IMG/VR virus record: IMGVR_UViG_3300027985_000918 | Span: 248,001 to 312,000 of that record | Strand: one strand, 5' to 3' | Length of the DNA stretch: 64,000 nt | Part shown: piece by piece, positions 48,176-62,622 of the stretch | Numbering within the stretch: position 1 is the stretch's first letter | Layout of the letters: each line of letters opens with the position of its first letter | Program-made: the position numbers and the translations under genes | The notes under the pieces: generated by a model | Told to the model about the DNA's origin: nothing | The model's database searches: none | The model's input: the letters and a program-made list of their open reading frames with translations, nothing else

Positions 48176-51100
48176 TTACAAACTTGCCCGGAGGTGGAAC
48201 TCAAGGGTGATGTACAGCAACGGGAACACCGGGCTGTAGTAGGCCACCACCTCAGCCACCGTCGGATCGTCCGCAGCCACGTTGGCCTTGACACCCGTGT
48301 AGGCGGAGATGATCTGCTGCTTCACCAAGGACTTCAGCATCATGCTCAGCCGGCCTTCGATCTGGGTGAGGATGCCGGGAAGAAACTTGATGCCGATGTA
48401 CCGCTCCAGAACCCCACGGCTCTGCCGCTGAACCTCGTCAGCGATCATCTGAACCGTCGGGAGCTTCAGGAGGCGGTAGCTCTCCTGGGACGGCTGGATG
48501 GTCGAGAGACCGTGACGGACCCGCAGGTACGGGGGCCGCTCTTCCAACACGATGACGCCCTTGGTTGCTACCTGGTTCATCTCGACGGCGTCGAGGCGCC
48601 GACCAAGCTGGCTGAACCCGACAAGGTTCCGTCCCGTCCACGGGGTCGCCACATCCACGCTCGGAGACACAACGGAACCGGCCAGGGCGGCGGCAATCAT
48701 CGTGCCGTCCACCAGGTGCTCCTTCGTGGATCCGAAAGCATTCGTGAGCTGGATAACCGCCACGTCCGGGTAAACCAACCGCATACGGGAGCTGTTCAGC
48801 GTCTGAGCCAAACTCATGGCGTTCTCGGGGGTCTTACCCGCCGACATGCCAATGATGCTCGTCCGCTCGCTCTTGTAGCGGATGGAGGACTGGATGCTGT
48901 TGGACCGGCTCAAGAGCTGATACAGCTCCGTGGAATCACCCCTCAGCGGGACGATGATGTCCGGGTTCACCCGACCCGGCAGCACCCCTTCCAGAGCCTC
49001 GATAGCCGCCCGGTAGCTCGTCACCGAAGCATAGCTGCTGTCGGTGTCCCGAACCACCTGCTTGATCCCCAGGAGAACGGCCCCGTTCAGGGTCGCCAGG
49101 AACGCCGCCAAGGAGACCGGATTGTCCGGGTGAATCGTGCCGTAGGCCGCCTCCACCGACGACAACTTCGTGTAGAAGGCCGTGGAGAAGTCGTCCTTCT
49201 GGTACGTGTACGTGACGTAGTACACGTCCCCGTTCAGAGGCTCGTTCCCCCCTCGCTCATAGGTGCTCACAACGGCCGTGTCACCCACCGCCATGCCCAG
49301 GGTGTTTGCCACCTTCAGCTCCAACCCCTTGAGCGCCAGAACCGGGAGGTTGGCGTCCGTGGTGAAAGTGCTGCTGACAGCGAACTGGAACGTGGCATTG
49401 ACCCCGGTGGGGTAGTTCACCCAGGGGCCGGTCGGGTTGCTGCTGTAGCCACGGGGAAGCACAGTGAACGTGAGTCCCGTGACAGAATCCCGGTAGGTCT
49501 GGCCAACCACACCGTCAGATCCAGTGCCGTTGTTCAGGACGGAGTCATTGGCAGAGCCAGATCCGTTCGGCTGGTTCGACACGACGAAGAACCCGTCGAT
49601 GCCCGCCTCACCGACCGCACCGTCCAGGCTCTCAGCGTTGACCCCCGTTCCCGGAGCCAGCCAGGAGTCCGTGACCACCGAAGCCACCGTCGGGTCACGC
49701 AGCTCGACGATGGAGCTGGTACCCAGGGACTGGCTCAAGAGGAACAGGAAATCGTTCCCAGCAGAGTCCTCAATCACCGAGGCCATCCCGAGCGTGGCGA
49801 ACATCTCGTTTGGATTCGGATTGACTGCCGTGAAGTCGAGTGCCCAGGTGGCGAACGTGCTGTGGCGGTTCTCATTCAGGGCCGACACCAGGGTACGGGC
49901 ATCGGGCAGCTCCCGCTGGGAGAGATCTCCCACCGTGAGCCCGAGAACGCTGGCAGCGGAGCCACCCGTGACCTCAACCTTGGAGAATACGTCGTACCGG
50001 GCCGATGTGAGGCCAAGACCCGCACCAACCTGGTAGACGATGCCGTTGGCGAACACTGCGGCGGCCGAGGCGCCGAACACCGTCGTAGCGGCGGCGATAG
50101 CGTCAATGATCTGGTCAAGCACCGAACCGTTGCTCGTCCCCGAAGCAGGGCCGAGGTCCGTCGCCGTGCCAGCCGCCGAAGAGGTGAACTGGACAGTGAT
50201 CGGGATGCCGTCGATGTTGATGACCAGCTCGTCGTTCGCCGCCTGGGAACCCGTTCCGTCGTAGAACACGACCTCGGGCTCAGATGTGGCAATGTCCTGG
50301 CCGCCCGTGAAACCGACCTGGCTCTCCAGGTAGGCAGGAACCACGGTGGAAGGACCACCCGCACCAAAGTCTCCTGTGGAGAGAGAGAAGCGGTCGAGAG
50401 CCGTACCCGCTCCCACCCGAAGCTCCATCTGGGCGACTTCGGACTGGGAAAGATCCCCACCAACCACCGACGGGATCAGGCGGTTGCGGAGGATAACCCG
50501 GTCGTACAGAGCACCGGATGCCCCGGCCACCGAGATGGTCTTCATCACGTCGCCAGCACACACGACGTGGGCCTGGCCTCCGCCTACGGCTGCCGCCGTC
50601 GAGAACCCCAACAGCTTGGCGAGGCTGTCGGCATCGGCAATGCCGTTGTTGATGAAGGTGAAGAACGCTTGGGCATCATCACCCGCAGCCCGGCATTTGA
50701 CCACGATGCGGCCGGAAGAGTCAGCCTCGACCACGAAGCCGGCACCGTCGAAGGCTGCTGCCGCCCCAACCCATCCCCCTGCCCCGTTCAAAGCAGCCTG
50801 TAGAGCAGCGGCGAGCGCTGCCGGACTGGTGTAAGGGCCAGCGGCCAAAGAGATAACCGCCGATGTGTAGGTACCTGCGGAATCTCCCGTGTACACGAAA
50901 CGGATGTCCGAGAAGGCCGTCAGATCCACCGGGCCGTCGATGACGGTGGCTCCCTTGTACTGAGCCATCGTGTCCGGATTGTACAGGCGCATCCCGGACC
51001 CGCCACCCACGTCCGACGCTGCTCCGGTCCAGGCTGCCACAGTGGCGATTCGGGTGGTCGAGTTGTAGTCCGTGATCGTGCGGACATCGCCCGCACCCGC

Positions 51101-53494
51101 AGCCATCGCCGGGATGAGGCTCACGTCACCGACCACGACATTCCAGCCAACGAAATACCCGTTGATGCTGCTACCGGGAACCGAGGCTGGCACCCGGAAC
51201 GTGGTGGCCGAGCCACCAGCATCCGAGGTGAACTGCACACCGTTGGCAGCCTCATTCACCGAGTCGTCCAGATCGGACACGTCGGAAGCCGTCTGAGCCG
51301 GGATGATGACCGGAATCTCGACCCCGTCGATGTAAAGGATCAGGTCCTCGTCGGTCGCCAGGGTGTAGCTCTGACCAAGGGTAGCTCCGGTGCCACCGTC
51401 GTAGTTGATCTCACCGCTGACCAAGTTCGCTGGGACACCGCCACCGTGGGTGGTCGGGTCGAGCAGGCTGATACCGGCCAGGCCAGCGTCCAGCTCCGTA
51501 TTGTCCAGACGGATGCGAACCTGGTCCGACTCATTCGGGATGAACTCGTAGGGGCCGTACCCCGGAACCGAGTACATCGCCTGAGTGGCGTCCTTGGACT
51601 CGAACTGGACCGTCACCACCTCGTTGATGGGGCCAGTGAACTCGTCGCCGGACAACCCCTCGAACCGGGCATCGGGAGTCAGCTCGGAACCGCTGGGCCA
51701 CTCCAGGGTCACTCCCGTGAGGGAGCTTCCCTTAGTCGTCGTGGAGAACGCAGCGTTGTAGATGGAGTCCCCGGCCTCATCGGTGATGGTGTACTGGCCC
51801 GTGCCACTGGCACCGATGAGGCGGGCAGTGAGGGTGAATTCCCCATCGGTCAGGGTGTTGTAGTAGAACGAGGCGTAGACCGTGGCACCCGTCGGGACGG
51901 ACTCGGCTAGCTCGATGATGTTCCCCTCGACCTTGGTCACCGTAACGGCACCCCGGTCCAGAGCGTCTTGGACGCTGTAGCCCCAAAAGGCGTTGACCAC
52001 GTCAGGCCGGTTGGTCGGGAGGTCGATGCGGCCGTTGGAGACCGTCTGGAACAGGCTGGTACCCAGAGGGGTGTTCCGACCATTACCCAGGGTCGGGGAG
52101 AACGGCAAGGTGAATTGGGTCTTGCTCTCGAAAGCGGAACCTCCGGAGGACAGAACCACCGGGGAGCAAGGGCTCATGAAGGTCTTGTCATCGACCAGCG
52201 TACCGCTGACCTGGGTCTCGTTGAACAGCTCAGAGCCCGAACTAGTGGTGTCCGCCTCGACCGTCCAGGCCGTACCCCAGAGGATCTTGTCGTCCTTCAA
52301 GACGAAGTCGGAACCCTGGTTGAACCCAACACCGTCGGGGACCTCACCAAGAGAGGTGACATCGACCACATTGTTGTGGGCAAGGTAGTCGAACGTGTTC
52401 TGCCAGGAGTTGAACCAGTAGGACACAAGGACCGTGGCGCCCACCTTCGGGGCCGTGGGCAGGGTGACCGCCCGAGTCGTCCCATCCACGCTGGTCGGAA
52501 TGACCTGAGTGCCGTTCACAAGAACCGTTACCTTCGAGGTGTCGGTCGTGGTGACGCCGCCATTGGTGCCGTCCACGATGGGTCCTTGGAACGTATAGAA
52601 CGTCTTCCGCCGACTGGTGGTCTGACCGCTCAGGAGACCGAGAGCGGAGTTGGCCGAACCGGCCCCCACCGTCACGTCGTTGGTCGCTGTCAGGCTCAGG
52701 GCACTGTGGCCGAACTGGTTCAGGAACGTGCTGGCCGTCAGGGTGCCCAGAGCTGCCGAACTGATCAGGTTGGCTACCTGCTTCATGGTATACGTGCCGG
52801 GGCTCAGCACAGATGTGTACTCCGTGCCGTCCACCGTCACGACGAACTCATTGTTGCCCGGGGTTACCACAGCACCGTTGGCATCAAGAGCATCCGCCCG
52901 CAGAATCACCGTCTCGGTACCCGGGGTTTGGGCATTTACGTCCTGGATGCCGGAGATGGCCCGGATGAGAGCCGGGTCCACGGACACCTGATCGGACAGA
53001 TCGTCCGTGATGTAGGTGTCGGTTCGGTTGAAGTAGTAGGTGACCCGCACGTCGGCATCGGCTGCCGGGGCCTGGGCCAACTCGACAATGCCCGTCAGGC
53101 CGTTCACCGACAGCACCACGATGGGGGTGCCGTTGATGGTGACAGAGACATCGGAGCGGCTGTAGGACACCGTCCCAGTACCGTCTCCGGTCACGATGGG
53201 CAGCTCACGGACCTTCAGCTTGGTGCGGACCCCGTCCCAGTTACCGACAGTCACGGCTCCCGCAGAGGAGATGGAGACCACGGCTCGGCCAGTGGCGTCC
53301 TCCTTGACACGTCGCTGGTCGATGTCAGCCGAAGACCCACGGACCACTTCCAGATTCCGCTGAATCAGGAACTCATTGCCTTCACCAATGAAAACGGGGA
53401 TTTTGAGGGTGTCGAGATTGCCCGCAATGGGGTTCTCGTACAGAGTTCGGGTGTACACGCTCGGAGGGGCGTACTGCTCGCCGGGGAAAGCCAT
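48176..53494 (-). CDS. Contractile tail sheath protein (1772 aa, large insertions)
   Basis: N-terminal YAPPSVYTRT...IPVFIGEG; C-terminal RVRHGLST...ADEVQRQSR..LERYIG.KF...DPTVAEVVAYYSPVFPLLYITLEF sheath signature; ATG at 53494 after GAGAGG. Confidence 0.9.
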   Translation of the reverse strand: MAFPGEQYAPPSVYTRTLYENPIAGNLDTLKIPVFIGEGNEFLIQRNLEVVRGSSADIDQRRVKEDATGRAVVSISSAGAVTVGNWDGVRTKLKVRELPIVTGDGTGTVSYSRSDVSVTINGTPIVVLSVNGLTGIVELAQAPAADADVRVTYYFNRTDTYITDDLSDQVSVDPALIRAISGIQDVNAQTPGTETVILRADALDANGAVVTPGNNEFVVTVDGTEYTSVLSPGTYTMKQVANLISSAALGTLTASTFLNQFGHSALSLTATNDVTVGAGSANSALGLLSGQTTSRRKTFYTFQGPIVDGTNGGVTTTDTSKVTVLVNGTQVIPTSVDGTTRAVTLPTAPKVGATVLVSYWFNSWQNTFDYLAHNNVVDVTSLGEVPDGVGFNQGSDFVLKDDKILWGTAWTVEADTTSSGSELFNETQVSGTLVDDKTFMSPCSPVVLSSGGSAFESKTQFTLPFSPTLGNGRNTPLGTSLFQTVSNGRIDLPTNRPDVVNAFWGYSVQDALDRGAVTVTKVEGNIIELAESVPTGATVYASFYYNTLTDGEFTLTARLIGASGTGQYTITDEAGDSIYNAAFSTTTKGSSLTGVTLEWPSGSELTPDARFEGLSGDEFTGPINEVVTVQFESKDATQAMYSVPGYGPYEFIPNESDQVRIRLDNTELDAGLAGISLLDPTTHGGGVPANLVSGEINYDGGTGATLGQSYTLATDEDLILYIDGVEIPVIIPAQTASDVSDLDDSVNEAANGVQFTSDAGGSATTFRVPASVPGSSINGYFVGWNVVVGDVSLIPAMAAGAGDVRTITDYNSTTRIATVAAWTGAASDVGGGSGMRLYNPDTMAQYKGATVIDGPVDLTAFSDIRFVYTGDSAGTYTSAVISLAAGPYTSPAALAAALQAALNGAGGWVGAAAAFDGAGFVVEADSSGRIVVKCRAAGDDAQAFFTFINNGIADADSLAKLLGFSTAAAVGGGQAHVVCAGDVMKTISVAGASGALYDRVILRNRLIPSVVGGDLSQSEVAQMELRVGAGTALDRFSLSTGDFGAGGPSTVVPAYLESQVGFTGGQDIATSEPEVVFYDGTGSQAANDELVINIDGIPITVQFTSSAAGTATDLGPASGTSNGSVLDQIIDAIAAATTVFGASAAAVFANGIVYQVGAGLGLTSARYDVFSKVEVTGGSAASVLGLTVGDLSQRELPDARTLVSALNENRHSTFATWALDFTAVNPNPNEMFATLGMASVIEDSAGNDFLFLLSQSLGTSSIVELRDPTVASVVTDSWLAPGTGVNAESLDGAVGEAGIDGFFVVSNQPNGSGSANDSVLNNGTGSDGVVGQTYRDSVTGLTFTVLPRGYSSNPTGPWVNYPTGVNATFQFAVSSTFTTDANLPVLALKGLELKVANTLGMAVGDTAVVSTYERGGNEPLNGDVYYVTYTYQKDDFSTAFYTKLSSVEAAYGTIHPDNPVSLAAFLATLNGAVLLGIKQVVRDTDSSYASVTSYRAAIEALEGVLPGRVNPDIIVPLRGDSTELYQLLSRSNSIQSSIRYKSERTSIIGMSAGKTPENAMSLAQTLNSSRMRLVYPDVAVIQLTNAFGSTKEHLVDGTMIAAALAGSVVSPSVDVATPWTGRNLVGFSQLGRRLDAVEMNQVATKGVIVLEERPPYLRVRHGLSTIQPSQESYRLLKLPTVQMIADEVQRQSRGVLERYIGIKFLPGILTQIEGRLSMMLKSLVKQQIISAYTGVKANVAADDPTVAEVVAYYSPVFPLLYITLEFHLRASL

Positions 53495-53512
53495 CTTCGT
53501 ACCTCTCTTCAA

Positions 53513-53642
53513 GGTGGTCAGTTTTCCAGCTCAAAAAAGCATCCGTTGTGCTTGCCGCATTTCGCCTCCCTTTGGGGGGAGGTAACCGGAAAGTTCTTCC
53601 GGAGCCCGAGTTGCGCTTATCTTTGCTGGCTATCTGACCACC
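53513..53642 (-). ncRNA. Putative structured cis-regulatory RNA (copy 1) in sheath leader
   Basis: Closing stem ggtggtcag/ctgaccacc, inner ccagc/gctgg and cgca/tgcg, hairpins ccggaa/ttccgg, cctccc/gggagg and aagca/tgctt; ends just 5' of the RBS. Confidence 0.65.
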
Positions 53643-53696
53643 GCAAAGCGGGGATGGCTTTCAGGGGCTATTTGCCCTCTGCTGATAAGCCGGGGG

Positions 53697-53711
53697 TATA
53701 GGCGTCCTACC
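53697..53711 (-). promoter_or_regulatory. Candidate late promoter motif (GGT-N6-CCTATA)
   Basis: Minus-strand GGTAGGACGCCTATA, about 200 nt upstream of the sheath ATG. Confidence 0.6.
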
Positions 53712-53714
53712 GAC

Positions 53715-54149
53715 TCACCCCTCTTTCACCTCACCCAGCCCTGCTTGCATGGCCCGGCTATTGATGCGGTTCGCCCTCACGGCGAATCCTTTCTCATCTG
53801 GGGTGATAGTTCTGTACTGCCCGTCAGGGTCTCTGGAGATCAAACGAGGGTCGACTCCTTCCCGAATGAGCTTCCTCTTGTCAGCCTGGCGCTTCTCAAT
53901 AACTGCCATGCTCTGTTCGGCGCTCTTGCCGATGACCCGGTCGATGTGGGTATCCAAGTCATGAATGCCCGTATTCTGTGGCCCCGGTCCGTTCACGGCC
54001 TTGTTGAACCTCCCGCTCACCGTCGCCGGCATCATGCGGGGCGCCAACTCACCGCAGTCGGGGCACTTCTGAGGCTCAGCCGCTTTGGATGCTTTGTTGG
54101 ATGCTGGGAACTGCACGCCGCAGTCACACTGATAGCGGTACGAAGGCAT
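53715..54149 (-). CDS. FmdB-family zinc-ribbon protein
   Basis: MPSYRYQCDCG...CPDCG N-terminus. Confidence 0.8.
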   Translation of the reverse strand: MPSYRYQCDCGVQFPASNKASKAAEPQKCPDCGELAPRMMPATVSGRFNKAVNGPGPQNTGIHDLDTHIDRVIGKSAEQSMAVIEKRQADKRKLIREGVDPRLISRDPDGQYRTITPDEKGFAVRANRINSRAMQAGLGEVKEG

Positions 54150-54168
54150 CTGGTCTCCCTAAGCCATG

Positions 54169-55023
54169 TCACGTTTCACCGTACCCGAAATCGTGCTTGA
54201 TCTTCTCCACGTCAAGGTGCAGTCCCCCATCCCACACCAGATACCGCTTGCCCAGGAGAAACAGAAGTCGGGCAGCCAATGCGGCTGGCAAAAGGGTGAA
54301 CGTCCCAAACCCAAACGAGTTCATCAAGAACCCGATGGCACTACCTGGCAGGGAAGACAACAGATCAGACAGGGACAATGCGCCTGTGAGGGCATCCGTC
54401 AGCGAGTGGATATCCCACTCGAACTCCGTCACGTTCATCCAGATCCAAATGTAAACGGCAAGCATCAACACCCTGGACATGGCTGGAGCGTACTTCCGCA
54501 GCCAGTGATCGAACTGGTCTACCTTAGGCTTGACCGACGACTGCACCCACTTCTTGAATCCCGGCAGCTTGTCCATCCATTGGGAGATGAGGCTGTTGAC
54601 GCTCAGTAGCTTGGATTCTTCCAACGTGAACAGCTTAAGGGGGAAGGTGCTGAACATCTTCCCCACCGCCTTGCGAAGGGCCTGATACCCCTGCTTCGCC
54701 AGGTCCTTGATGGCCCCGGGCAGCTCCAAAAGGGACTTGATCCCCAGCCTGTCCTTGAAGGCCTCCCAGAGCTTCTTGCTCTTGGAGAACACCTTGCCAA
54801 GCTGCTGGAGCTTCTGACGAATATTCCCGAAGGCCACCTTGCCGTGAGGGAGGAGGAACTCCCCGAACGCTTCCAGAACCTCGGGGGTGATCTCCTGGAA
54901 GTGGGCCGTCTTGGCACCTACGGAGGAAATACTGTGATGAGCCTCCCGGGCGGCCATTCGGATCGTGAATCGAACCGCCAGGCGCTGGGCATCTCTCATG
55001 AGGGTATCGTTCATCTGACTCAC
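54169..55023 (-). CDS. Hypothetical protein with C-terminal hydrophobic segments
   Basis: 284 aa; ATGA overlap with the upstream gene; VLMLAVYIWIWM and a second hydrophobic stretch. Confidence 0.7.
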   Translation of the reverse strand: MSQMNDTLMRDAQRLAVRFTIRMAAREAHHSISSVGAKTAHFQEITPEVLEAFGEFLLPHGKVAFGNIRQKLQQLGKVFSKSKKLWEAFKDRLGIKSLLELPGAIKDLAKQGYQALRKAVGKMFSTFPLKLFTLEESKLLSVNSLISQWMDKLPGFKKWVQSSVKPKVDQFDHWLRKYAPAMSRVLMLAVYIWIWMNVTEFEWDIHSLTDALTGALSLSDLLSSLPGSAIGFLMNSFGFGTFTLLPAALAARLLFLLGKRYLVWDGGLHLDVEKIKHDFGYGET

Positions 55024-56228
55024 CGAATCAGGGCGTAGCCCTTACCGACCTGGTAGTAAGGGTCCCGGACTGTGCTTAGACCCAGATGGGTCATGGCCTT
55101 GATGTTGCCTTCCTGCCCTACCAGTTCCTCATCCGAGAGCCCGGCGATGTAATTGGCCTGCTCCAGGGTAAGAGGGGTGACCTGGCGAAGGTTGACGTTC
55201 AGCGGGACGTAGGCAGCCCACTCCGTCTCCACTGTGAGTGAGAAGCTGGAGTTGAAGATGTAGTCTTCCCCCTGCTCATCATAAATCTCTTCGGACTCCC
55301 CCCCGATGGAGATGTTCATGATCTCCAGCCCCTCCGTGGAGAGCTGCCCCCTAGCGGCGCCGAACAAATACATGACGGAGTTGTCCGCAATCTCCCGCTG
55401 GTCAAACACGTCCCGGGCGAACACCTCGAAGTCCATCGTCATCTCCCACCGGCCCCCGTACTCCAGGGCGGAGGGCCGTCGGGTCGTCTCCACTACAACG
55501 GCGAGCTGGTCCCCATTGAACACCCTCCTCCCGAAAGCCAGGACTACCCCTGGAATGGCCGTGTTGTTGGCATGCCTCTCGATGATTCGGTGGGGCCCCG
55601 TGCTTTCAGTCACATAACGGTAGTCTGCCTGGAGCCACCTGCCCCCCGACAGAGGGGTAGTCAGGTTGATGACACCCGTGGGCGATCCCGAGTCGGGGTC
55701 CGTCTCCAAAGTATAGTTGGACCCCTCCACCATCATGTACCGGGCGGGCATCTCGAATAGCCGGAGAGTCCCAGCCACAGGGGAATTTGCAAGGACTCCC
55801 GTGGTGGTGTCCGATAGCATGACCTGTTCGTGGTACACGTTCAGGAGGGGGTCCACATAGAAGACCATGTTCCCGTCTTCCTCCATCACGTCCAGGTAGT
55901 AAACCCCAGGAGGACTGGGAAACACCCCGCCGTTTCTCTGGATCTCCCGGATGTCCTCCCGAACCCACTCCACCGAGTACCCCGGCTTGTTGTTCACCTT
56001 AGCCCAGTGGCAATGGCTGTACACAACCCCCCGATAGTTGTCGGCCGAGAGAGGGATATGGCTTCCACCACCCGACTTGACCACGATCCCCCGCTGGGGA
56101 CGATCCTTGAAGCTGTACTTTCCCTGGATGTTGTCGGGCAAGTCTGAAAACTTCGGGTGGGTCAGCCAGTACCTTCGCAGCTCCTGAATGAAGCGGCGGG
56201 TTAGGTAGTCGGTTAGCTGGAAAAACAT
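55020..56228 (-). CDS. Putative tail terminator/neck completion protein
   Basis: ATG at 56228 after GGAGG; MDFEVFARDVFDQREIAD..V.YL and YIFNSSFSLTVETEW resemble the terminator fold; between neck and sheath genes. Confidence 0.5.
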   Translation of the reverse strand: MFFQLTDYLTRRFIQELRRYWLTHPKFSDLPDNIQGKYSFKDRPQRGIVVKSGGGSHIPLSADNYRGVVYSHCHWAKVNNKPGYSVEWVREDIREIQRNGGVFPSPPGVYYLDVMEEDGNMVFYVDPLLNVYHEQVMLSDTTTGVLANSPVAGTLRLFEMPARYMMVEGSNYTLETDPDSGSPTGVINLTTPLSGGRWLQADYRYVTESTGPHRIIERHANNTAIPGVVLAFGRRVFNGDQLAVVVETTRRPSALEYGGRWEMTMDFEVFARDVFDQREIADNSVMYLFGAARGQLSTEGLEIMNISIGGESEEIYDEQGEDYIFNSSFSLTVETEWAAYVPLNVNLRQVTPLTLEQANYIAGLSDEELVGQEGNIKAMTHLGLSTVRDPYYQVGKGYALIR

Positions 56229-56261
56229 GGTTGCCTCCACGGGTCCTACTACGGGACCTGC

Positions 56262-56276
56262 GATAGGCTACCCACC
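56262..56276 (-). promoter_or_regulatory. Candidate late promoter motif variant (GGT-N6-CCTATC)
   Basis: Minus-strand GGTGGGTAGCCTATC upstream of the ATG at 56228. Confidence 0.45.
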
Positions 56277-56603
56277 GGGAAGGAGGCGCAGAAGCCCTCG
56301 GCCGTCGAACAGTTCGAGTCGGCCAGTAGGGGTTCGGATCAAGTCCCATGCCACTCTCTGAGGAACCCGGGCTTGGGCAATACGGTTTGCCTGGGGGGTG
56401 ACTAAGGGGTTCAGGAAGATCCCCCCCCAGTCAGGGGGCTTGATCTTGGATATGGGGATCAGATGCCAGACATAGTCCGCCACGAGGAACCCCAGATATC
56501 TCCGTTTGGGGTCATCGTAAGATCTCAGCCAAGCTCCCTTACGGAGGGCCACCTCGGCTCTCCTAAGCCACCCGCCCAGAGACCTGGAAACTACCTCCCT
56601 CAC
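56268..56603 (-). CDS. Hypothetical basic protein
   Basis: 111 aa ORF abutting the GroES-like stop. Confidence 0.55.
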   Translation of the reverse strand: MREVVSRSLGGWLRRAEVALRKGAWLRSYDDPKRRYLGFLVADYVWHLIPISKIKPPDWGGIFLNPLVTPQANRIAQARVPQRVAWDLIRTPTGRLELFDGRGLLRLLPGG

Positions 56604-56951
56604 TTACTGCCCCTTCACAATGTACGGAAACACTGCGACAGGGAGGGACTCAGACACTTTGTCGGCATACTTCCCCAACACCTGGTGACCCCCCACGAGA
56701 ATACACTTCTGGCCCAGCCCCACCAACTCGATCTGGCCTTCAGGGAGATAGGCCACCCGGTCACCGGGGACATAGGGCATGGGGATCACCTTGCCATTCT
56801 CGAACACCCGTCCCTCCCCCACCCCCAGTACGAGACCAACCTCATACTCCCGAGGAAGGTTGCTTCCAGGCATGAGGATACTCCGATCGTCCTTCATGTC
56901 GGGGACGACCACAAGGCGATTTCCGGTGGGAATGAACTGCATGGGGTTCAA
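56604..56951 (-). CDS. GroES/Cpn10-like co-chaperonin
   Basis: FIPTGNRLVV...GLVLGVGEGRVFENGKVIPM...GDRV.Y pattern of Cpn10. Confidence 0.85.
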   Translation of the reverse strand: MNPMQFIPTGNRLVVVPDMKDDRSILMPGSNLPREYEVGLVLGVGEGRVFENGKVIPMPYVPGDRVAYLPEGQIELVGLGQKCILVGGHQVLGKYADKVSESLPVAVFPYIVKGQ

Positions 56952-56969
56952 GCTCCTTGGTGAGATGTG

Positions 56970-57998
56970 TCAGTCCTCTTCGTGCTCGATGATGGCCTGG
57001 GTCAGCATCCCGTTCGCAACCGCATTCATGGGATCGGAGGCGTGCCGGATCTCAGACACCTGGACGGGGAATCTCTTCCGTCGCTTATCGAACTCCCGCT
57101 CAAAGAGCTGGAGGAAATTACCCGCCATGCTCGTACCCCCGGAGACCACCAGAGGGATGGGAGTGGGCAACTCGAACTGCCCCTTGATATCCTTGAAACG
57201 CTTGGCGATCTCGTCGAGGGCGTAGCGGATCAGCTCCTTGTAATAGAAGGTAATCGCTTCCTGCTCCCTCCCCTGAGGATTCAGAAGGTCCACCCCCGCC
57301 TCCTTGATGGCACAGATACGGGCCTGGGTGGACCCCACCGACCCGGCGACCCCAGAATCGATCCAATCCCCACCACGAGCCACCGAGAAAGACAGCCCTT
57401 CGATGGTGTTGATGGCGAGAGCCACGTTGGTCATCCCTGAGCCGAAGCTCAGAGCGATTCCGCTGAACCCGTTCTTAGCGCACTCCGAGAACACAATCGC
57501 CATCGCCTCGTTGCTAGGCCAGGGGGTGTAGCCGCATTCCTCGACGATCCTCTCAAAGACCCCCTTGTGGTAGATCACGTCCTTCTGGGGACGGTCGACA
57601 GGGGCTGCGGGGACCGAGAAGTAGCAGTGCTCCCCGGTGATTCTGGGGGGCCCCAGGATCTGCCTGATCATCATCCCGAGAACTTCCAGAGCCTCGATCT
57701 CACCGGCAGCCACCAAACCTGCTTCGAGGGGCCGCCGGGCCTCTTTGCCGAAAACGTTGGCGGTCTCCATCGCAGCATCTCCCAGCAGGAGCACGTCATC
57801 TTCTCGCTCAACGAAGCTGGTCCCCGACAGCTTGAGCATCTTCTTGGCGGACGGGGGAAGATCCAGAAAGGCATCCCGCATCCGATTGTGCTCCACCCCG
57901 TTGGGGGTCCTGCGAGCCGCCACCAAGTTCATAGTGCCGATGTCGAGCCCTACCCCATGGGGAGCCTGAGTCGTTGCTTCTTTCTTTGTGGGTGCCAT
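56970..57998 (-). CDS. Actin-like ATPase (MreB/ParM/MamK superfamily)
   Basis: Phosphate-1 GLDIGTMN, connect-1 NEAMAIV, phosphate-2 LSFGSGMTN, adenosine VVSGGTS and connect-2 NAVANG motifs; 342 aa. Confidence 0.9.
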   Translation of the reverse strand: MAPTKKEATTQAPHGVGLDIGTMNLVAARRTPNGVEHNRMRDAFLDLPPSAKKMLKLSGTSFVEREDDVLLLGDAAMETANVFGKEARRPLEAGLVAAGEIEALEVLGMMIRQILGPPRITGEHCYFSVPAAPVDRPQKDVIYHKGVFERIVEECGYTPWPSNEAMAIVFSECAKNGFSGIALSFGSGMTNVALAINTIEGLSFSVARGGDWIDSGVAGSVGSTQARICAIKEAGVDLLNPQGREQEAITFYYKELIRYALDEIAKRFKDIKGQFELPTPIPLVVSGGTSMAGNFLQLFEREFDKRRKRFPVQVSEIRHASDPMNAVANGMLTQAIIEHEED

Positions 57999-58009
57999 CT
58001 GGGGGTCTC

Positions 58010-58651
58010 CTATTCCTTGCCCGTCTTACTCTTCCGGGCCGCTTTAAGTGCCGCCGCAGCGTCGGCCACCCCGGTGCCCTTCGCTTCGGACCTCTTGACC
58101 TTAATGTCCCCCTTCACATCCGCCGACACGAGCTTGTCGGGGATGAACACAGGGGTGGGCTCATCCTGGATCGTACCCGAGGATTCCACCGACGTTCGAG
58201 GTACTGGAGAGCCAGCCACCTGCATGTTCGCCAGGGCGGCCAAGAGCCGGGACTCCATCCCTGCAAGCTGCACATGGACCTCTGCGGCTACCTCTTCCCT
58301 GGTGAGGCCTGGGGGGATCTTCTCCTCCAGTACCTGAGCCACCACTTGTGGGATCACCTGGATGAGCGCCGGAGGGGGGCTCGTGTGTGAAGTAGAAGGT
58401 GAAGCTAGGGGTTGGGGCAAAGGATTCTGGACCACGGGAGACACCCGGGGTCTCCGGGGAAGAGTTCTCCGCTCCTCAAACCTCTTGACGGGCCTAACGG
58501 AGACTGCCCCATTCTGACGAGCCCGGTGAAGATCCATTGATGCCTGAGCTTCCGCATAGGGGATGTACTGCTTGTCTCCCCGGTCGAGGGTCAGGCCCAG
58601 ATCTGGCAGCTCGATGTGTCGGCAAACGCCGGTGATTTCGGCTTCGATCAT
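58010..58651 (-). CDS. Hypothetical protein with Pro-rich linkers and basic C-terminus
   Basis: Start reassigned to the ATG at 58651 (ATGA overlap with the upstream stop); about 213 aa. Confidence 0.7.
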   Translation of the reverse strand: MIEAEITGVCRHIELPDLGLTLDRGDKQYIPYAEAQASMDLHRARQNGAVSVRPVKRFEERRTLPRRPRVSPVVQNPLPQPLASPSTSHTSPPPALIQVIPQVVAQVLEEKIPPGLTREEVAAEVHVQLAGMESRLLAALANMQVAGSPVPRTSVESSGTIQDEPTPVFIPDKLVSADVKGDIKVKRSEAKGTGVADAAAALKAARKSKTGKE

Positions 58652-59262
58652 TTGGTCGGATCCCCCTTGGCCAGATGCCGGACAATCTCCTCCACCAGTC
58701 TGCTCACGCACCTTTTCCTCCCCTTACGGATCGCCCTCTGCACGAAGGTAAACTTGGCGATACCCGGGTGAATCCAGGCGTCCTGTGTCTCGAAGGGGGC
58801 GAATCGGAGGATAACCCCTCCCCCCTTCTGCTTTAGGGGGACGATCAAAGGCAAACGCTCACCCTTGGATACCTTTCCCGACTTCTTCATACCCCTACGG
58901 CGTTCCCCGGGGGTCAGGTTGAACCGCTCAGGGTGCTCTTCTTTGTATTCCTGAGTCATCCAGGTCATTTTTCGGCTGGGGATGTCCCCAGAGGTCAGCT
59001 CTGGCATCCCATACCAGCTCGACTTGATGTCAATGGTGCTCTTACCCACGATGCGGAAACTCCAGGACTCCGCAAAATCGGGCCCCCCCTTCGGATCACG
59101 GACGGACCACCCCCTCTTGGCGAAGTCCTTGAGACCTTCCTCTATGATGGTCTCGATGAGGCACTTCGCCAGATCTTCCAGCACCTCCCGGGAGATTGGA
59201 ATCTTGGACATCTCCGACCAAGGTTTCCCATAGACACTCCGCACTCGACGGATATCACCCAT
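58648..59262 (-). CDS. Hypothetical basic protein, possible virion morphogenesis/neck protein
   Basis: 204 aa; WIHPG..K..F..RAI C-terminal motif seen in phage neck-region proteins. Confidence 0.55.
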   Translation of the reverse strand: MGDIRRVRSVYGKPWSEMSKIPISREVLEDLAKCLIETIIEEGLKDFAKRGWSVRDPKGGPDFAESWSFRIVGKSTIDIKSSWYGMPELTSGDIPSRKMTWMTQEYKEEHPERFNLTPGERRRGMKKSGKVSKGERLPLIVPLKQKGGGVILRFAPFETQDAWIHPGIAKFTFVQRAIRKGRKRCVSRLVEEIVRHLAKGDPTK

Positions 59263-59285
59263 GCGTCACCACACCGCTTCTTTCA

Positions 59286-59313
59286 GGTAACCCAAGCGGC
59301 CCCGCAAGTAGAT
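59286..59313 (+). promoter_or_regulatory. Candidate ECF-like promoter GGTAAC-N16-GTAGAT
   Basis: Upstream of the isolated plus-strand gene. Confidence 0.55.
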
Positions 59314-59335
59314 GAAACGAAGCAAGGAGAACCCT

Positions 59336-59779
59336 ATGCAGAACCTGACTGTGAGCGCCGTAAAGAACTTTTACCGCAACCCGAAAACCTCCGCCTTGCG
59401 GGTTGCCGTTTTGGCGGCCCGGGAAATCGCCGCCGAGCGGAGGACCCATGTCGATGGGTACATCAAACCGCTCTTGGCGGTGATGGACCTGCGGGACACG
59501 AAGGGAGAGCAGATTCTCGACACCAAGTGGCTCTTCCTCTGCGAGGATGAGGACGCCTGCACCGCATTCTACGCCGCCTGCGACGTGGCCCATCGGGAAC
59601 ACGGGTTCCATCTGGAACCTGGCTACTGCCCCGCCCTCGTGGCGGAGAGCAACGCCATCAACGCCGAGAACGCCCTCATCGAAGCGGCCTCCGCCCACTT
59701 CGAGGTGGACTTCACTCGCCTCTTCAAGCTGGAACAACGACGTCAGCTCTTGGACCTCCTAGTCAACGGCGTCTACTGA
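59336..59779 (+). CDS. Hypothetical protein (about 147 aa)
   Basis: AAGGAG RBS before the ATG at 59336; codon style matches the other plus-strand genes. Confidence 0.7.
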   Translation: MQNLTVSAVKNFYRNPKTSALRVAVLAAREIAAERRTHVDGYIKPLLAVMDLRDTKGEQILDTKWLFLCEDEDACTAFYAACDVAHREHGFHLEPGYCPALVAESNAINAENALIEAASAHFEVDFTRLFKLEQRRQLLDLLVNGVY

Positions 59780-59785
59780 GCTGCC

Positions 59786-61237
59786 TCAGTAGGACGTGTT
59801 CTCCCAGACCTTGGTTCGACCCCTCTTCTCGGTATTCTCGGGAACGCTGCCTTTCTCGCTCTGAAGAGGGGTCTCGGCGGGATCATCTGCCCCCTCAGGA
59901 TAGCTCGGACCTGCCCAACCCTCATCCTGGTCATAGGACCTCTCCCCAGTGACGGGCATCCTCGGGTAGATAGGGGCCTCCTGGCTAGGAAGAGGCCGGG
60001 TCTCCGGCCAGGCCAGATCTTCGGTGCCGTCGATAGGCACCCGGTAACGAATGTCGCCTTCGCTGAAGTAGCCAATGTTGAAATGTTGCTGAAGCATATT
60101 GCCCCGATGCGTCGGCCTGCGGACAGCACCAACACTGTACCTCTCGTTGGTCTGCTTCACGATGAAGTCCCGCTGGGTGATCAGCGGGGTAGGCCCCATC
60201 CAAACCTCGTAGGTATGCTCCTTACGACGGCCGTACATGGTCTGTGTGATTCGGCGCTCAGCGTCATCCGGGGCGATGATAATGTCGAAAGGACCGTCGT
60301 AACCACCAACGAAGCCTGTGCCATAGCAAATAAGGCAGTTGTTTTGTGGCTGGCTGTGGTACTCCAAGCTCCTGGGGTCCAGGGTGCAATCACAGGGGAT
60401 CCCGCTGTGCTTGCGAATGAACAGCTTCACCCTCTCTCCACCCTGCTGGAGAATCCAGTGGTTCCGCCGGACCGCCTCTTCCCAAATCCAGTCGATGCTC
60501 TCCACCTCAGCCGTGGATAGAGGACGACTCTGACTTAGAGGGGTTTCGCTGTACCCCGAGGGGGTCTCGGAATCGAGAACCACTGTGGTCAACCTGTACC
60601 AGATGAACCTATCGAGCCCTGAGACGTTGTAGTTCCGGAACGTCCAGTATTCGACCTCGACCACGGAGTCTTCAGTGGGGATGAGAGCGTTTACCGCCGA
60701 CTCCGTCCCCACATCGAACTGGGCCTGGTTGATGAGGGTCACCTCACCAGAACGCCCGAAGACGTCACCCACAGGAACCTCAACCCCGTCGATGTACAGA
60801 GTCACATCGTCCGGGGCATTTCCGTACACGGGAGCAGCACTATAGATGCTGTCCGTCCCCCTCTTGGCGATCCTCTTCTGAGTGCGGAACTGGAACTTTC
60901 GGTCGTTAGGCTTGTCACCCCTGAACACCCAGTCTTGGTTCCAGCGGACGGTCTCCCGGACAGGAATGATGTCGGTCTTGTCCTGGTAGTAGCACGAGCC
61001 GATGGGGTACTCGTTGATCCGGTAGAAAGGGCCACGGTCGGAGCTGTCAGAGCGGTAGATGTTCACCCCCACCACATGGTAGGCGGTGTTGCCGGACAGG
61101 AGGGCAGGATTTTCCCACCGGATGTCGTGGATACCCGGTGTGAACATGGACACGGCGGCCCCGTTCGTGGGTGGGAGTGGGTACCCCCCCGAACCGAATC
61201 CTGATCCCACACCCAACGGGTCCCATCCGGCCGTCAT
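59786..61237 (-). CDS. Neck/head-completion protein with Zn-binding motif
   Basis: GERVKLFIRK..G.PCDC...NCLICYGTGFVGGY motif seen in neck proteins of large myophages; 483 aa. Confidence 0.65.
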   Translation of the reverse strand: MTAGWDPLGVGSGFGSGGYPLPPTNGAAVSMFTPGIHDIRWENPALLSGNTAYHVVGVNIYRSDSSDRGPFYRINEYPIGSCYYQDKTDIIPVRETVRWNQDWVFRGDKPNDRKFQFRTQKRIAKRGTDSIYSAAPVYGNAPDDVTLYIDGVEVPVGDVFGRSGEVTLINQAQFDVGTESAVNALIPTEDSVVEVEYWTFRNYNVSGLDRFIWYRLTTVVLDSETPSGYSETPLSQSRPLSTAEVESIDWIWEEAVRRNHWILQQGGERVKLFIRKHSGIPCDCTLDPRSLEYHSQPQNNCLICYGTGFVGGYDGPFDIIIAPDDAERRITQTMYGRRKEHTYEVWMGPTPLITQRDFIVKQTNERYSVGAVRRPTHRGNMLQQHFNIGYFSEGDIRYRVPIDGTEDLAWPETRPLPSQEAPIYPRMPVTGERSYDQDEGWAGPSYPEGADDPAETPLQSEKGSVPENTEKRGRTKVWENTSY

Positions 61238-61242
61238 CTACC

Positions 61243-61587
61243 TCACTCCCCGCCGAGGGACCCCGGGAAGGGAGCCACGTTGGGGACCACCTGGACCTTG
61301 TTGTCCGGGGTGATCCTCCACGGGGTGCCCCTCTCAATCCCACAACGCTGTGCAATCCCGTCCATAACTTCCTGCCCCTTGGCCTCGATGGCGCCGATAC
61401 GCCCGAGCAGAGAGGCCTTCTTCACTTCGAGCTGGCCGATATGGTTGTAGACGGCGTTGGCCTGAGCCTGAAGTTGCTGGAGCTGGACCATCTCAGCCGG
61501 GGCCAGTTCGCCCACAAAACCCTCGGCCACCTTGTTCTCGTCGGTGGTTTCGGGGGCCTGCTGTGCGGTCTTGTTCTCTTCAAGCAT
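61243..61587 (-). CDS. Small coiled-coil hypothetical protein
   Basis: 114 aa ORF in the operon. Confidence 0.65.
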   Translation of the reverse strand: MLEENKTAQQAPETTDENKVAEGFVGELAPAEMVQLQQLQAQANAVYNHIGQLEVKKASLLGRIGAIEAKGQEVMDGIAQRCGIERGTPWRITPDNKVQVVPNVAPFPGSLGGE

Positions 61588-61647
61588 GATGTTTCCCCAT
61601 CTCAGTTACCCCCGCAACATGCGGGATGCCCCGACTGTACCCACCGG

Positions 61648-61899
61648 CTACACGTCCTGAACCTCATCCTCCACCTTCCTCTTGAGGGCGGTGAGAAAAT
61701 TCATCAAGTGAACCCCCAACCAAGACTGGAGGGTCAGCCGGCGGGCGGGGGTAATCCTGGTAGGGTGCCGGTAGAAAGAATAGTACACCACCCCATCCTG
61801 ATCCACGTACTTGTAGACCCGACGACCAACGACTGCCGCTTCCAGGATGCGCCGCTCCTCGCTCATTTCCTGGTCTTTGCTCTGCACCACATCCTCCAT
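61648..61899 (-). CDS. Small hypothetical protein
   Basis: 83 aa; GGAGG upstream; start uncertain. Confidence 0.55.
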   Translation of the reverse strand: MEDVVQSKDQEMSEERRILEAAVVGRRVYKYVDQDGVVYYSFYRHPTRITPARRLTLQSWLGVHLMNFLTALKRKVEDEVQDV

Positions 61900-62541: not shown

Positions 62542-62586
62542 TCCGTCCTCCTTTCACGGCGGGGGCTCTTTTATCTGAAGTCGGAG

Positions 62587-62601
62587 TATAGTCAGAAGAA
62601 C
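62587..62601 (-). promoter_or_regulatory. Candidate late promoter motif variant (GTT-N6-ACTATA)
   Basis: Minus-strand GTTCTTCTGACTATA at the head of the structural operon. Confidence 0.4.
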
Positions 62602-62622
62602 GCAACCGCTAGGATAAGACCA

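What the first reader, a model, noticed from the sequence alone, without database searches (positions are those of the whole stretch)
56604..58651. Actin-like ATPase, Pro-rich partner and GroES embedded in the neck gene cluster
Seen: an actin-fold ATPase with all five motifs, 11 nt downstream of a protein with a small N-domain, Pro-rich linkers and a basic tail, followed by a Cpn10 homolog; all are co-oriented between neck and terminator genes. Known: jumbo phages use tubulin PhuZ for positioning and capsid transport, ParM works with an adjacent adaptor, and T4 gp31 is a GroES analog. Inference: an actin-based cytomotive or assembly system expressed late, with the upstream gene as adaptor.
Basis: partly seen in the sequence, partly recalled or inferred. 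Interest (0 to 1): 0.78.

Follow-up and report, generated by a model that had tools for sequence, protein, structure and literature searches.

The report
Volactin-type actin with adaptor in huge phages
A 402-kb phage from a hydrothermal vent encodes, inside its neck and tail genes, a close structural relative of the archaeal filament protein volactin plus a conserved tether protein, which suggests that many huge phages run their own actin-like cytoskeleton late in infection.

Summary
Window 56970-57998 (-) encodes a 342-aa actin-fold ATPase. It is a clear member of Pfam Volactin (235 bits against a cut-off of 35). Its AF2 model (pLDDT 94) superposes on Haloferax volcanii volactin at TM 0.91 with 35% identity. 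MreB, MamK, ParM-like proteins and actin are far more distant (TM 0.73 or less, about 15% identity).

The gene 11 nt upstream (58010-58651) encodes a small N-domain, a Pro-rich linker and a conserved C-terminal tail ('FIP' motif, helix, basic end). The pair lies between neck-like genes and a tail-terminator-like gene, upstream of a 1778-aa sheath gene. This order recurs in scores of huge-phage contigs.

The partner was found in 77 of 77 assessable loci. In relatives without the actin gene, the partner keeps its N-domain but has lost the C-tail (50/50 against 0/11). A complex prediction gives weak support for the tail docking on the actin (0.40 against 0.00 in controls).

The GroES is real but lineage-specific, and the genome also encodes a GroEL elsewhere.

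Best reading: a filament-plus-adaptor system tied to virion neck/tail assembly. Polymerisation, expression timing and cargo are untested. I found no mention of it in the huge-phage papers I checked.

The parts
56970..57998 (-). Volactin-family actin-like ATPase (342 aa)
   Evidence: Pfam PF25216 at 234.9 bits against cut-off 35; no other actin-fold family reached E<=0.01, and FtsA scored only 13.6 bits. AF2 model pLDDT 94.3. Foldseek: volactin D4GU28 at TM 0.91, rmsd 1.7 A, 35% identity. MreB, MamK, BeeR and actin at TM 0.73 or less.
58010..58651 (-). Adaptor candidate (213 aa): N-domain, Pro-rich linker, helices, C-terminal tail
   Evidence: ORF. A homologue lies upstream of the actin in 77/77 assessable loci. 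Alignment A3. AF2 model. No Pfam, PHROG, NCBIfam or PDB match.
58481..58651 (-). Partner N-domain (aa 1-57): five strands plus a helical hairpin
   Evidence: pLDDT 94-98. No significant fold match. Retained as a short stand-alone protein in 7 of 11 relatives that lack the actin.
58013..58165 (-). Partner C-tail (aa 163-213): 'P-x-F-I-P' motif, acidic/Ser stretch, Ala-rich helix, basic end. Proposed actin-binding module.
   Evidence: F169, I170, P171, A198 and L202 are conserved. Present in 50/50 loci with the actin and 0/11 without it. Residues 173-206 contact the actin in the complex prediction, ipSAE 0.40 against 0.00 in controls.
56604..56951 (-). GroES/Cpn10 homologue. A lineage-specific insert, not part of the actin system. 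Likely start is the ATG at 56942.
   Evidence: Pfam Cpn10 31.1 bits and phrog_3188. Found only in the window and in L003/L013. The genome encodes a GroEL at G000:C1:5014-6528.
56268..56603 (-). Unknown 111-aa ORF in the variable slot between the actin and the terminator
   Evidence: No family hit. No homologue in 79 related loci.
55020..56240 (-). Tail-terminator-like protein (p406)
   Evidence: Atlas leads to SP10_terminator, Phage_tail_terminator and T4-gp15. tblastn hit to the annotated tail terminator of Tunturiibacter phage Tunturi_5, E=1e-7. Conserved downstream of the actin.
58648..59262 (-). HK97-gp10-like neck / tail-completion-like protein (p204). Its stop overlaps the partner's ATG.
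   Evidence: Atlas feature and structure leads to HK97-gp10_like and Phage_tail_S. ATGA overlap. Found in 72 of 79 loci.
59786..61237 (-). Neck/adaptor-like protein (p483) with a Cys-rich motif
   Evidence: Weak Atlas structural leads to T4_neck-protein, Phage_H_T_join_2 and Minor_capsid_1 over residues about 255-389. Conserved in 60 of 79 loci.
48176..53512 (-). Giant tail sheath protein (1778 aa)
   Evidence: phrog_2839 tail sheath, E=1.2e-23 over residues 1427-1773. Conserved downstream.
53715..54149 (-). Zn-ribbon protein (144 aa) between the terminator and the sheath
   Evidence: Zn_ribbon_8 at 30.3 bits, below the cut-off of 34.4. Syntenic in 59 of 79 loci and in L168.

Best explanation
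Proposed mechanism: a two-part actin-like system carried by a large clade of huge tailed phages.

- The 342-aa protein is a volactin-family actin. It is inferred to bind ATP and to polymerise into dynamic filaments, as its characterised archaeal relative does.
- The upstream protein is its adaptor. Its C-terminal 'FIP'-plus-helix tail docks on the actin, partly on the helices that line the cleft between subdomains IA and IIA. ParR's C-terminal helix binds the equivalent cleft of ParM (from my own knowledge of that system).
- The adaptor's N-domain is an older member of the neck/tail gene block. It is inferred to bind a virion assembly intermediate, such as the neck of a filled head or the terminator end of a tail.
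- Because the pair appears to be co-transcribed with the neck, terminator and sheath genes, the filament would gather or move very large heads and tails so that they can join.

Shown: family membership, fold, gene pairing, strict co-occurrence of the C-tail with the actin, and operon-like packing.

Inferred: polymerisation, late timing, and the identity of the cargo.

The GroES gene is a separate accessory; its probable partner is the phage's own GroEL.
For: - Family and fold: Pfam Volactin 234.9 bits, nothing else significant. AF2 pLDDT 94.3. Volactin at TM 0.91 and 35% identity; next come salactin, MreB, MamK, actin and Arp2. Volactin forms dynamic filaments in vivo (PMC10869688).
- ATP-site motifs are conserved in 38 relatives.
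- Strong constraint: the actin is 60-85% identical across 79 loci, against medians of 32-52% for its neighbours. It is the most conserved of five genes in 49/49 loci. Mean pairwise distance is 0.34 against 0.45-0.47 for p406 and p483.
- Inteins sit in its phosphate-2 and GGDW motifs in relatives.
- The partner lies upstream in 77/77 assessable loci.
- Start/stop overlap and the 11-nt gap are seen directly; no promoter-like site was found, and terminator-like sites were at the chance level.
- C-tail present in 50/50 loci with the actin and 0/11 without. 7 of those 11 keep an N-domain-only protein.
- Complex prediction: 0.40/0.40/0.30 against controls of 0.00, rated 'weak support'. Partner residues 173-206 contact actin helices 147-155, 170-178 and 321-340, among others.
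- A C-tail-like motif also lies upstream of a 49%-identical homologue (L008) and on the cut contig L005.
- Neighbours are neck- and terminator-like.
- No tubulin gene in the genome.
Against: - No polymerisation, ATPase or expression data exist. No RNA run was listed.
- The complex score is a weak pass only, and my own alignments were used rather than the calibrated kind.
- The N-domain has no recognisable fold relative, so its cargo is a guess.
- The pair is dispensable for this virion type. A 536-kb relative rated 100% complete has the same neck-terminator genes but no volactin and no tubulin.
- Actin distances track those of the neighbours only weakly (rho about 0.3, against 0.72 between the neighbours). 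The cassette may move between phages, or the signal may be saturated.
- Phosphate-2 opens with Ser rather than the usual Asp, so the nucleotide chemistry may differ.
Confidence: 0.55

Rival explanations
1. Genome positioning or segregation, as in ParMRC or AlpAC. The adaptor binds phage DNA through its N-domain or basic tail, and the filament moves or anchors replicating or episomal phage genomes.
For: - An adaptor-plus-actin gene pair is the layout of AlpA/AlpC in prophage CGP3, where the adaptor ties phage DNA to filaments (PMC4446434).
- Some volactin-family members carry an N-terminal ParB HTH domain (P0147, P0159).
- The adaptor ends in a Lys/Arg-rich tail.
Against: - The pair is embedded in, and overlaps, neck and tail genes rather than replication genes.
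- The N-domain persists in that block without the actin.
- No iteron or centromere-like repeats lie within 56000-60000, and no tandem arrays nearby.
- The N-domain is not a ribbon-helix-helix or HTH by its predicted secondary structure.
- No ParM profile match.
Confidence: 0.18
2. Host cell remodelling. The phage actin alters host shape, size or division (a volactin- or MreB-like role) to make room for very large virions, with the partner acting as a regulator or anchor.
For: Volactin itself affects cell shape, and its filaments touch the membrane by their tips (PMC10869688). MreB proteins are among the next-nearest folds.
Against: - The C-terminal helix is Ala-rich and lacks the large hydrophobic residues I would expect in a membrane-targeting helix (that expectation is my own knowledge).
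- There is no transmembrane segment in the partner model.
- The position in the neck-tail block, and the neck-module origin of the adaptor, are not explained.
Confidence: 0.12
3. A non-polymerising actin-fold ATPase that acts as an assembly chaperone (Hsp70 NBD- or EutJ-like) for neck or tail proteins, possibly together with GroES/GroEL.
For: - It lies among assembly genes.
- EutJ and FtsA appear among the fold hits at lower rank.
- GroES lies next to it in this genome.
Against: - No HSP70 profile hit even at E<=10.
- There is no substrate-binding domain; the 342 aa are wholly the actin fold.
- The best matches are filament formers.
- GroES is absent from 78 of 79 related loci.
- A conserved tail-bearing partner fits a filament adaptor better.
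Confidence: 0.1
4. A virion component: the actin-fold protein or its partner is built into the neck or tail of the particle.
For: The genes lie between neck and terminator genes, where gene order often mirrors assembly order. The N-domain-only form persists in that slot.
Against: - An intact ATP site is conserved.
- A complete relative with the same neck and tail genes lacks the actin.
- I know of no actin-fold virion protein (my own knowledge).
- The partner's N-domain may well be a virion or assembly protein, which is compatible with the best explanation.
Confidence: 0.05

Closest known systems
Volactin (VolA, HVO_2015) of Haloferax volcanii; Pfam PF25216
   Same: Same Pfam family (235 bits). 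Predicted structures superpose at TM 0.91, rmsd 1.7 A, with 35% identity. Volactin forms dynamic filaments in vivo (PMC10869688).
   Different: This one is encoded by a bacteriophage. A bacterial host is inferred from an 84-nt tRNA-Tyr, the long-arm type I know as bacterial (my own knowledge), and from a GroEL/GroES pair. It sits in a neck-tail gene block with a dedicated partner, whereas the volactin paper notes that volactin-binding factors are still unknown. A role in cell shape is not indicated here.
AlpC/AlpA of Corynebacterium prophage CGP3
   Same: A phage-encoded actin-like protein co-transcribed with an upstream adaptor that binds it (PMC4446434).
   Different: A different actin family. 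AlpA binds phage DNA and the pair is expressed early for replication. Here the pair lies in the morphogenesis block, and the adaptor's N-domain belongs to the neck module.
ParM/ParR/parC type II plasmid partition
   Same: The logic of filament plus adaptor, with a short C-terminal segment of the adaptor predicted to dock on the actin, partly at the IA/IIA cleft helices.
   Different: No ParM profile match. The adaptor gene lies upstream, not downstream. The N-domain is not ribbon-helix-helix. No centromere-like repeats were found nearby.
PhuZ tubulin spindle of nucleus-forming jumbo phages
   Same: A phage-encoded cytomotive filament in very large phages. PhuZ is reported to position the phage nucleus and deliver capsids, which is a functional analogy to what is proposed here.
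   Different: Tubulin fold, not actin fold. This genome has no tubulin gene. PhuZ has no known gene-linked adaptor of this kind (my own knowledge).
Salactin, MreB, MamK, BeeR, crenactin and actin
   Same: Same actin fold. They are the next-best structural matches (TM 0.59-0.73).
   Different: About 13-17% identity and no profile-level match. They have different partners and cellular roles.
GroES (Cpn10) / T4 gp31
   Same: The adjacent 112-115-aa protein passes the Cpn10 threshold. The phage also encodes a GroEL homologue.
   Different: It is a true Cpn10 homologue rather than a gp31-type analogue. It is confined to this phage and one close relative, so it is unrelated to the actin pair.

Membership tests
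Volactin family (Pfam PF25216) | Profile score above the curated gathering threshold over the full length | tested here: met
   234.9 bits against 35; residues 16-335 cover profile positions 3-321 of 321. The genome scan agrees.
Volactin family (Pfam PF25216) | Fold closest to the founding member, H. volcanii volactin | tested here: met
   Foldseek rank 1 is D4GU28: TM 0.91/0.90, rmsd 1.7 A, 35% identity, E=8.7e-36. Rank 2, salactin, is at TM 0.72.
Volactin family (Pfam PF25216) | Forms dynamic filaments in cells | not testable with these tools
   Shown only for the Haloferax protein (PMC10869688). Needs biochemistry or imaging.
Actin-fold (ASKHA) ATPases | Five conserved motifs: phosphate 1, connect 1, phosphate 2, adenosine, connect 2 | tested here: met
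   D19/G21/T22, E164, G186/G188, G287/G288/T289 and G330 are invariant or at least 90% conserved in 38 sequences. Phosphate 2 opens with Ser184 instead of Asp.
ParMRC (type II partition) | ParM-family actin by profile | tested here: not met
   No ParM/StbA hit even at E<=10.
ParMRC (type II partition) | Adaptor whose C-terminal peptide binds the actin | tested here: inconclusive
   ipSAE 0.40 against 0.00, rated 'weak support'. Backed by the 50/50 against 0/11 co-occurrence of tail and actin.
ParMRC (type II partition) | Centromere of repeated adaptor-binding sites next to the operon | tested here: not met
   Only chance-level two-copy repeats in 56000-60000, and no tandem array near the genes.
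ParMRC (type II partition) | Adaptor with a ribbon-helix-helix DNA-binding N-domain | tested here: not met
   The N-domain is five strands plus two short helices. No DNA-binding fold was matched.
MreB/Mbl | MreB_Mbl profile (PF06723) above threshold | tested here: not met
   No hit for this protein. The structural match is only TM about 0.65 at 15-16% identity.
Hsp70/DnaK | HSP70 profile and a substrate-binding domain | tested here: not met
   No HSP70 hit. The 342 aa are entirely the actin fold.
AlpC/AlpA-type phage actin system | Early expression and a DNA-binding adaptor | not testable with these tools
   No RNA run was listed. The genomic position among neck and tail genes argues against early expression.
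GroES/Cpn10 (adjacent gene) | Cpn10 profile above threshold, and a GroEL encoded in the same genome | tested here: met
   31.1 bits against 21.1. A 540-aa Cpn60 homologue lies at G000:C1:5014-6528.

The most novel reading that the evidence does not exclude
A large, environmentally widespread clade of huge bacteriophages runs its own volactin-type actin cytoskeleton. A neck-module protein that has gained an actin-binding tail hooks filled heads or finished tails onto the filaments for transport or head-tail joining. This would be an actin-based counterpart of the PhuZ tubulin spindle, and the first natural binding partner described for the volactin family.
Probability: 0.35. Interest if true: 0.85.

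Novelty: new variant of a known kind. Interest (0 to 1): 0.72.

Why it matters
Cytoskeletal systems encoded by phages are so far known mainly from the PhuZ tubulin of nucleus-forming jumbo phages and a few ParM/AlpC-type actins tied to DNA. This case differs in four ways.

- The actin family involved has so far been characterised only in haloarchaea.
- It is conserved at 60-85% identity across scores of huge-phage contigs of up to 619 kb, from many samples.
- It is wired into the neck-tail morphogenesis block.
- It has a partner whose domain make-up changes with the presence or absence of the actin.

If the model holds, it gives a testable case of filament-assisted virion assembly in bacteria. 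It also provides a candidate volactin-binding motif, a point the volactin paper left open. The two huge-phage reviews I checked, the Al-Shayeb 2020 study and two marine/aquatic surveys do not mention actin homologues.

Tried and rejected
- Sequence search of the actin against PDB chains gave only noise, with aquaporin Z at E=0.17.
- PHROGs and NCBIfam gave nothing for the actin, the partner, p204, p406 or p483.
- The diverse alignment A1 was too divergent for a locus scan, so I used the closer set A2.
- BLAST of the partner against the N-terminal extensions of longer volactin-family proteins found no fusion. Those extensions are ParB HTH domains or unknown.
- Fold searches of the partner in PDB and AFDB clusters found no significant named fold. 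tblastn of the partner against GenBank phages found nothing.
- Expression could not be checked. Only DNA runs from hydrothermal-vent samples hold the sequence, and no RNA run was listed.
- Identity-to-window correlations were uninformative because actin identity plateaus. Pairwise-distance correlation was used instead.
- One genome search failed on syntax. I then dropped a taxon survey around the 'Thermoplasmata' MAG, because its contig looks like a mis-binned phage fragment.
- A labelled phylogeny against MreB, ParM, MamK and AlfA was not built, because I had no tool-supplied sequences for those families. Profile and fold ranking answer the same question.
- I rejected the idea that GroES belongs to the system, and the idea that the clade infects archaea.
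Full report
**Where it is.** The window is positions 248001-312000 of a 402,383-bp IMG/VR virus record with direct terminal repeats. The sequence is held by hydrothermal-vent metagenome runs. All genes discussed here lie on the minus strand. In order of transcription they are:

| Gene | Coordinates | Identification |
|---|---|---|
| p483 | 59786-61237 | neck/adaptor-like |
| p204 | 58648-59262 | HK97-gp10-like |
| partner | 58010-58651 | adaptor candidate |
| actin-like gene | 56970-57998 | volactin family |
| Cpn10 gene | 56604-56951 | GroES homologue |
| p111 | 56268-56603 | unknown |
| p406 | 55020-56240 | tail-terminator-like |
| p284 | 54169-55023 | unknown |
| Zn-ribbon protein | 53715-54149 | Zn_ribbon_8, below cut-off |
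| sheath | 48176-53512 | 1778-aa tail sheath |

The stop of p204 and the ATG of the partner overlap as ATGA. The partner-to-actin gap is 11 nt and is preceded by AGGAG. The Cpn10 gene most likely starts at the ATG at 56942, behind an AAGGAG. A consensus scan found no promoter-like site in 53000-63000. Terminator-like sites occurred at the chance level (9 against 7.8 expected). The block therefore reads as one transcription unit. That is an inference from the spacing, not a measurement.

**The observation.** It is confirmed. The 342-aa protein matches Pfam Volactin at E=2.2e-69 (234.9 bits, cut-off 35) over its whole length. Even at E<=10 the only other hit is FtsA at 13.6 bits. An alignment with 37 relatives down to 32% identity shows the five actin-fold motifs conserved: D19/G21/T22, E164, G186/G188, G287/G288/T289 and G330. 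One family-wide peculiarity is that phosphate-2 opens with Ser184 rather than Asp. The partner has a small folded N-domain, a Pro-rich disordered linker, two helices and a basic C-terminus. The Cpn10 match passes the threshold (31.1 against 21.1 bits).

**What the actin-like protein is.**
- Sequence search against PDB chains found nothing.
- The AlphaFold2 model is confident (mean pLDDT 94.3, pTM 0.91).
- Against Swiss-Prot models the first hit is volactin of Haloferax volcanii (D4GU28): TM 0.91, rmsd 1.7 A, 35% identity, E=8.7e-36. Salactin follows at TM 0.72 and 16% identity, then MreB, MamK, FtsA, Arp2 and actin.
- Against solved structures the best hits are MreB, MamK (TM 0.73), BeeR (0.70), actin and crenactin, all at about 13-17% identity.

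The protein therefore does not cluster with non-filament ASKHA enzymes. It is a member of the volactin family, whose founding member forms dynamic filaments in living cells (PMC10869688). Polymerisation of the phage protein itself is inferred, not shown.

**How widespread it is.**
- The word-indexed search returned 2036 proteins at E<=0.001, and the best 120 clusters were all at least 65% identical.
- The exhaustive search over 50%-identity representatives found 1028 clusters at E<=0.001.
- A scan of IMG/VR found 157 loci. The 80 kept lie on contigs of up to 618,736 bp.
- Two GenBank 'uncultured phage' genomes carry homologues: LR745208.1 (485 kb, 66% identity, same gene order) and LR756511.1 (595 kb, 29% identity, different context).

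The host is probably bacterial. The genome encodes 30 tRNAs, including an 84-nt tRNA-Tyr of the long-arm type I know as bacterial (my own knowledge), and it also encodes a GroEL/GroES pair. A 9-kb contig binned as a Thermoplasmata archaeon carries a 67%-identical copy. That contig also holds the end of a partner gene and a sigma-like gene, so it is most likely a mis-binned phage fragment.

**Synteny.** In the 80 loci the order p483 - p204 - partner - actin - [variable slot] - p406 - Zn-ribbon - sheath recurs almost everywhere. The actin is 60-85% identical to the window's copy (median 64%). The neighbours have medians of 32-52%. In all 49 loci that hold the five genes, the actin is the most conserved. 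Those loci were chosen by actin similarity, but the loci seeded with p406 show the same pattern. The mean pairwise distance is 0.34 for the actin against 0.47 and 0.45 for p406 and p483.

Such constraint is what one expects of a polymer whose surfaces are largely contact surfaces, though that is an argument, not a proof. Actin distances correlate only weakly with those of the neighbours (rho 0.29-0.32, against 0.72 between the two neighbours). Either the signal is compressed or the cassette sometimes moves between related phages.

**What the flanking genes are.** This rests on leads rather than family membership.
- p204 resembles HK97-gp10-like and P2 gpS-like proteins.
- p483 gives weak structural leads to T4 neck, head-tail joining and SPP1 gp15-like families.
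- p406 gives leads to tail-terminator families. It also hits the annotated tail terminator of Tunturiibacter phage Tunturi_5 (25% identity, E=1e-7), which likewise lies just upstream of that phage's sheath gene.

**The partner.** HMMs of its N-domain and C-tail found a partner gene upstream of the actin in 77 of 80 loci. In the other three the actin sits at the contig edge, so the pairing holds in 77 of 77 assessable cases. In a few loci a homing-endonuclease-like ORF separates the two genes.

The conserved parts are:
- the N-domain (about 57 aa);
- a 'P-x-F-I-P' motif (F169, I170, P171);
- an Ala-rich helix (A198, L202);
- a Lys/Arg-rich end.

The N-domain is modelled at pLDDT 94-98 as five strands and a helical hairpin. 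It has no significant match in PDB or AFDB clusters. Only one such protein is encoded in the genome.

**A natural deletion experiment.** Scanning IMG/VR with the terminator-like p406 found 234 relatives. In 61 loci both p204 and p406 are visible, so the interval between them is complete.
- 50 loci contain the actin. All 50 have a partner with both the N-domain and the C-tail.
- 11 loci lack the actin, and none of them has the C-tail.
- Of those 11, 7 keep a short (about 130-180 aa) protein with the N-domain, a Pro-rich stretch and a basic end. The other 4 lack both.

Fisher's exact test gives p = 2e-12, though the loci are phylogenetically related, so this overstates independence. One of the actin-less genomes is 536,053 bp, rated 100% complete, and has no volactin-family or tubulin gene anywhere.

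Two conclusions follow:
- The FIP-plus-helix tail is the actin-specific module.
- The N-domain and the basic end have a job in the neck/tail block that does not need the actin.

The pair is therefore an accessory of this virion type, not a building block of it.

**Does the tail bind the actin?** A complex prediction with two actin copies and the full partner scored 0.40, 0.40 and 0.30, against 0.00 for all three controls. The tool's verdict was 'weak support'. That mark was reached by 58 of 80 solved complexes and 2 of 110 mismatched pairs, but passes at 0.60 or under are weak. The confident contacts involve partner residues 173-206. On the actin they involve residues 28-40, 61-65, 72-75, 104-114, 147-155, 170-178, 197-198 and 321-340. 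In the model's secondary structure these include the helices that line the cleft between subdomains IA and IIA. From my own knowledge, ParR binds ParM at the equivalent cleft, and many actin-binding proteins bind actin there. Given the prior from gene linkage and co-occurrence, I take the interaction as likely but unproven. A similar tail lies upstream of a 49%-identical homologue (L008). A weaker one (E=0.002) lies upstream of a tandem pair of volactin paralogues in L009.

**GroES.** It is present only in the window and its closest relative (85% actin identity). It occupies a slot between the actin and the terminator that holds different genes in different phages, or none. The genome encodes a 540-aa GroEL homologue near position 5-6.5 kb, its probable partner. 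GroES is therefore not part of the actin system.

**Mechanism.** The best-supported reading is a filament-plus-adaptor system acting with the neck and tail genes. The actin polymerises, the adaptor's tail docks on it, and the N-domain holds an assembly intermediate. The benefit would be to bring together very large heads and tails, which I would expect to diffuse poorly in a crowded cell (my own reasoning, untested). I put this at about 0.55 overall. Confidence differs a great deal by step:
- family identity, about 0.95;
- adaptor relationship, about 0.75;
- virion-assembly cargo, about 0.4.

**Rivals.**
- DNA positioning of the ParMRC/AlpAC kind. For: ParB-HTH fusions elsewhere in the family, and the basic tail. 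Against: the position in the genome, the absence of repeats, and a non-DNA-binding-like N-domain.
- Host shape remodelling.
- A non-polymerising chaperone.
- A virion component.

**Novelty.** Phage actins with adaptors are a known kind (AlpAC, PMC4446434; ParM-like systems of plasmid prophages). This is a different actin family, in a different genomic setting, with an adaptor that appears to derive from a neck-module protein. I found no mention of actin homologues in two huge-phage reviews, the Al-Shayeb 2020 study or two marine/aquatic surveys. None of the 14 listed volactin papers (17 hold the term) concerns phages, judging by title. I rate it a new variant of a known kind.

Noticed in passing
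relatives P0121, P0123, P0125, P0128, P0131, P0142, P0154, P0167, P0170, P0176 (aligned to window aa ~184-210): Volactin-family genes of about 700 aa carry inteins with HNH or LAGLIDADG endonucleases. There are at least four different insertion points, inside the phosphate-2 motif (S-F-G-S-G-M-T-N) and before G-G-D-W. P0121 is 63% identical to the window's protein.
   Followed up: partly
P0147, P0159; L009:732-4112: Some family members carry an N-terminal ParB HTH domain. In L009 such a fusion lies directly after a second, plain volactin paralogue and a coiled-coil ORF whose end weakly resembles the partner's C-tail.
   Followed up: partly
P0168 (1160 aa): A volactin domain is fused to Wzz/GNVR and a ParA/MinD-like (BY-kinase-type) ATPase. 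This is probably a cellular polysaccharide-chain-length protein with an actin head.
   Followed up: no
G000:C1:5014-6528 (-), outside the window: The phage encodes a 540-aa GroEL (Cpn60) homologue, the probable partner of the GroES at window 56604-56942.
   Followed up: partly
G000:C1:9128-57275 and 158402-158477, outside the window: ARAGORN finds 30 tRNA genes in the phage genome. One has anticodon CTA and is called 'Pyl', so it is a possible amber suppressor. The tRNA-Tyr is 84 nt, the long-arm type.
   Followed up: no
L011:7296-7802, L057:3135-3920, L071:5522-6331: In several relatives an ORF that looks like a homing endonuclease is inserted between the partner and the actin gene.
   Followed up: no
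L005 (QMTU01000018.1, 'Thermoplasmata archaeon' MAG): This 9-kb contig has a 67%-identical actin, the cut end of a partner gene, a sigma-like gene and a TldD-like gene. It is probably a phage fragment binned into an archaeal MAG.
   Followed up: partly
window 17186-28888 (-), 31894-37140 (-), 6402-9917 (-): There are very long minus-strand ORFs of 3900, 1748 and 1171 aa in the tail region. The 1778-aa protein matches a sheath family only over its last ~350 residues.
   Followed up: no
window 62623-63591 (+): A ThyX flavin-dependent thymidylate synthase (Thy1, E=1.4e-51) is transcribed divergently from the structural block. It is syntenic in some relatives.
   Followed up: no
window 59312-59779 (+): A 155-aa ORF lies on the opposite strand in the 523-nt gap between p483 and p204. 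This interval varies in length among relatives (about 1.5 kb in L003).
   Followed up: no
window 54169-55023 (-): p284, between the terminator-like gene and the Zn-ribbon gene, has a weak GspL-like hit (16.6 bits, far below the cut-off). It was found in only one other locus.
   Followed up: no
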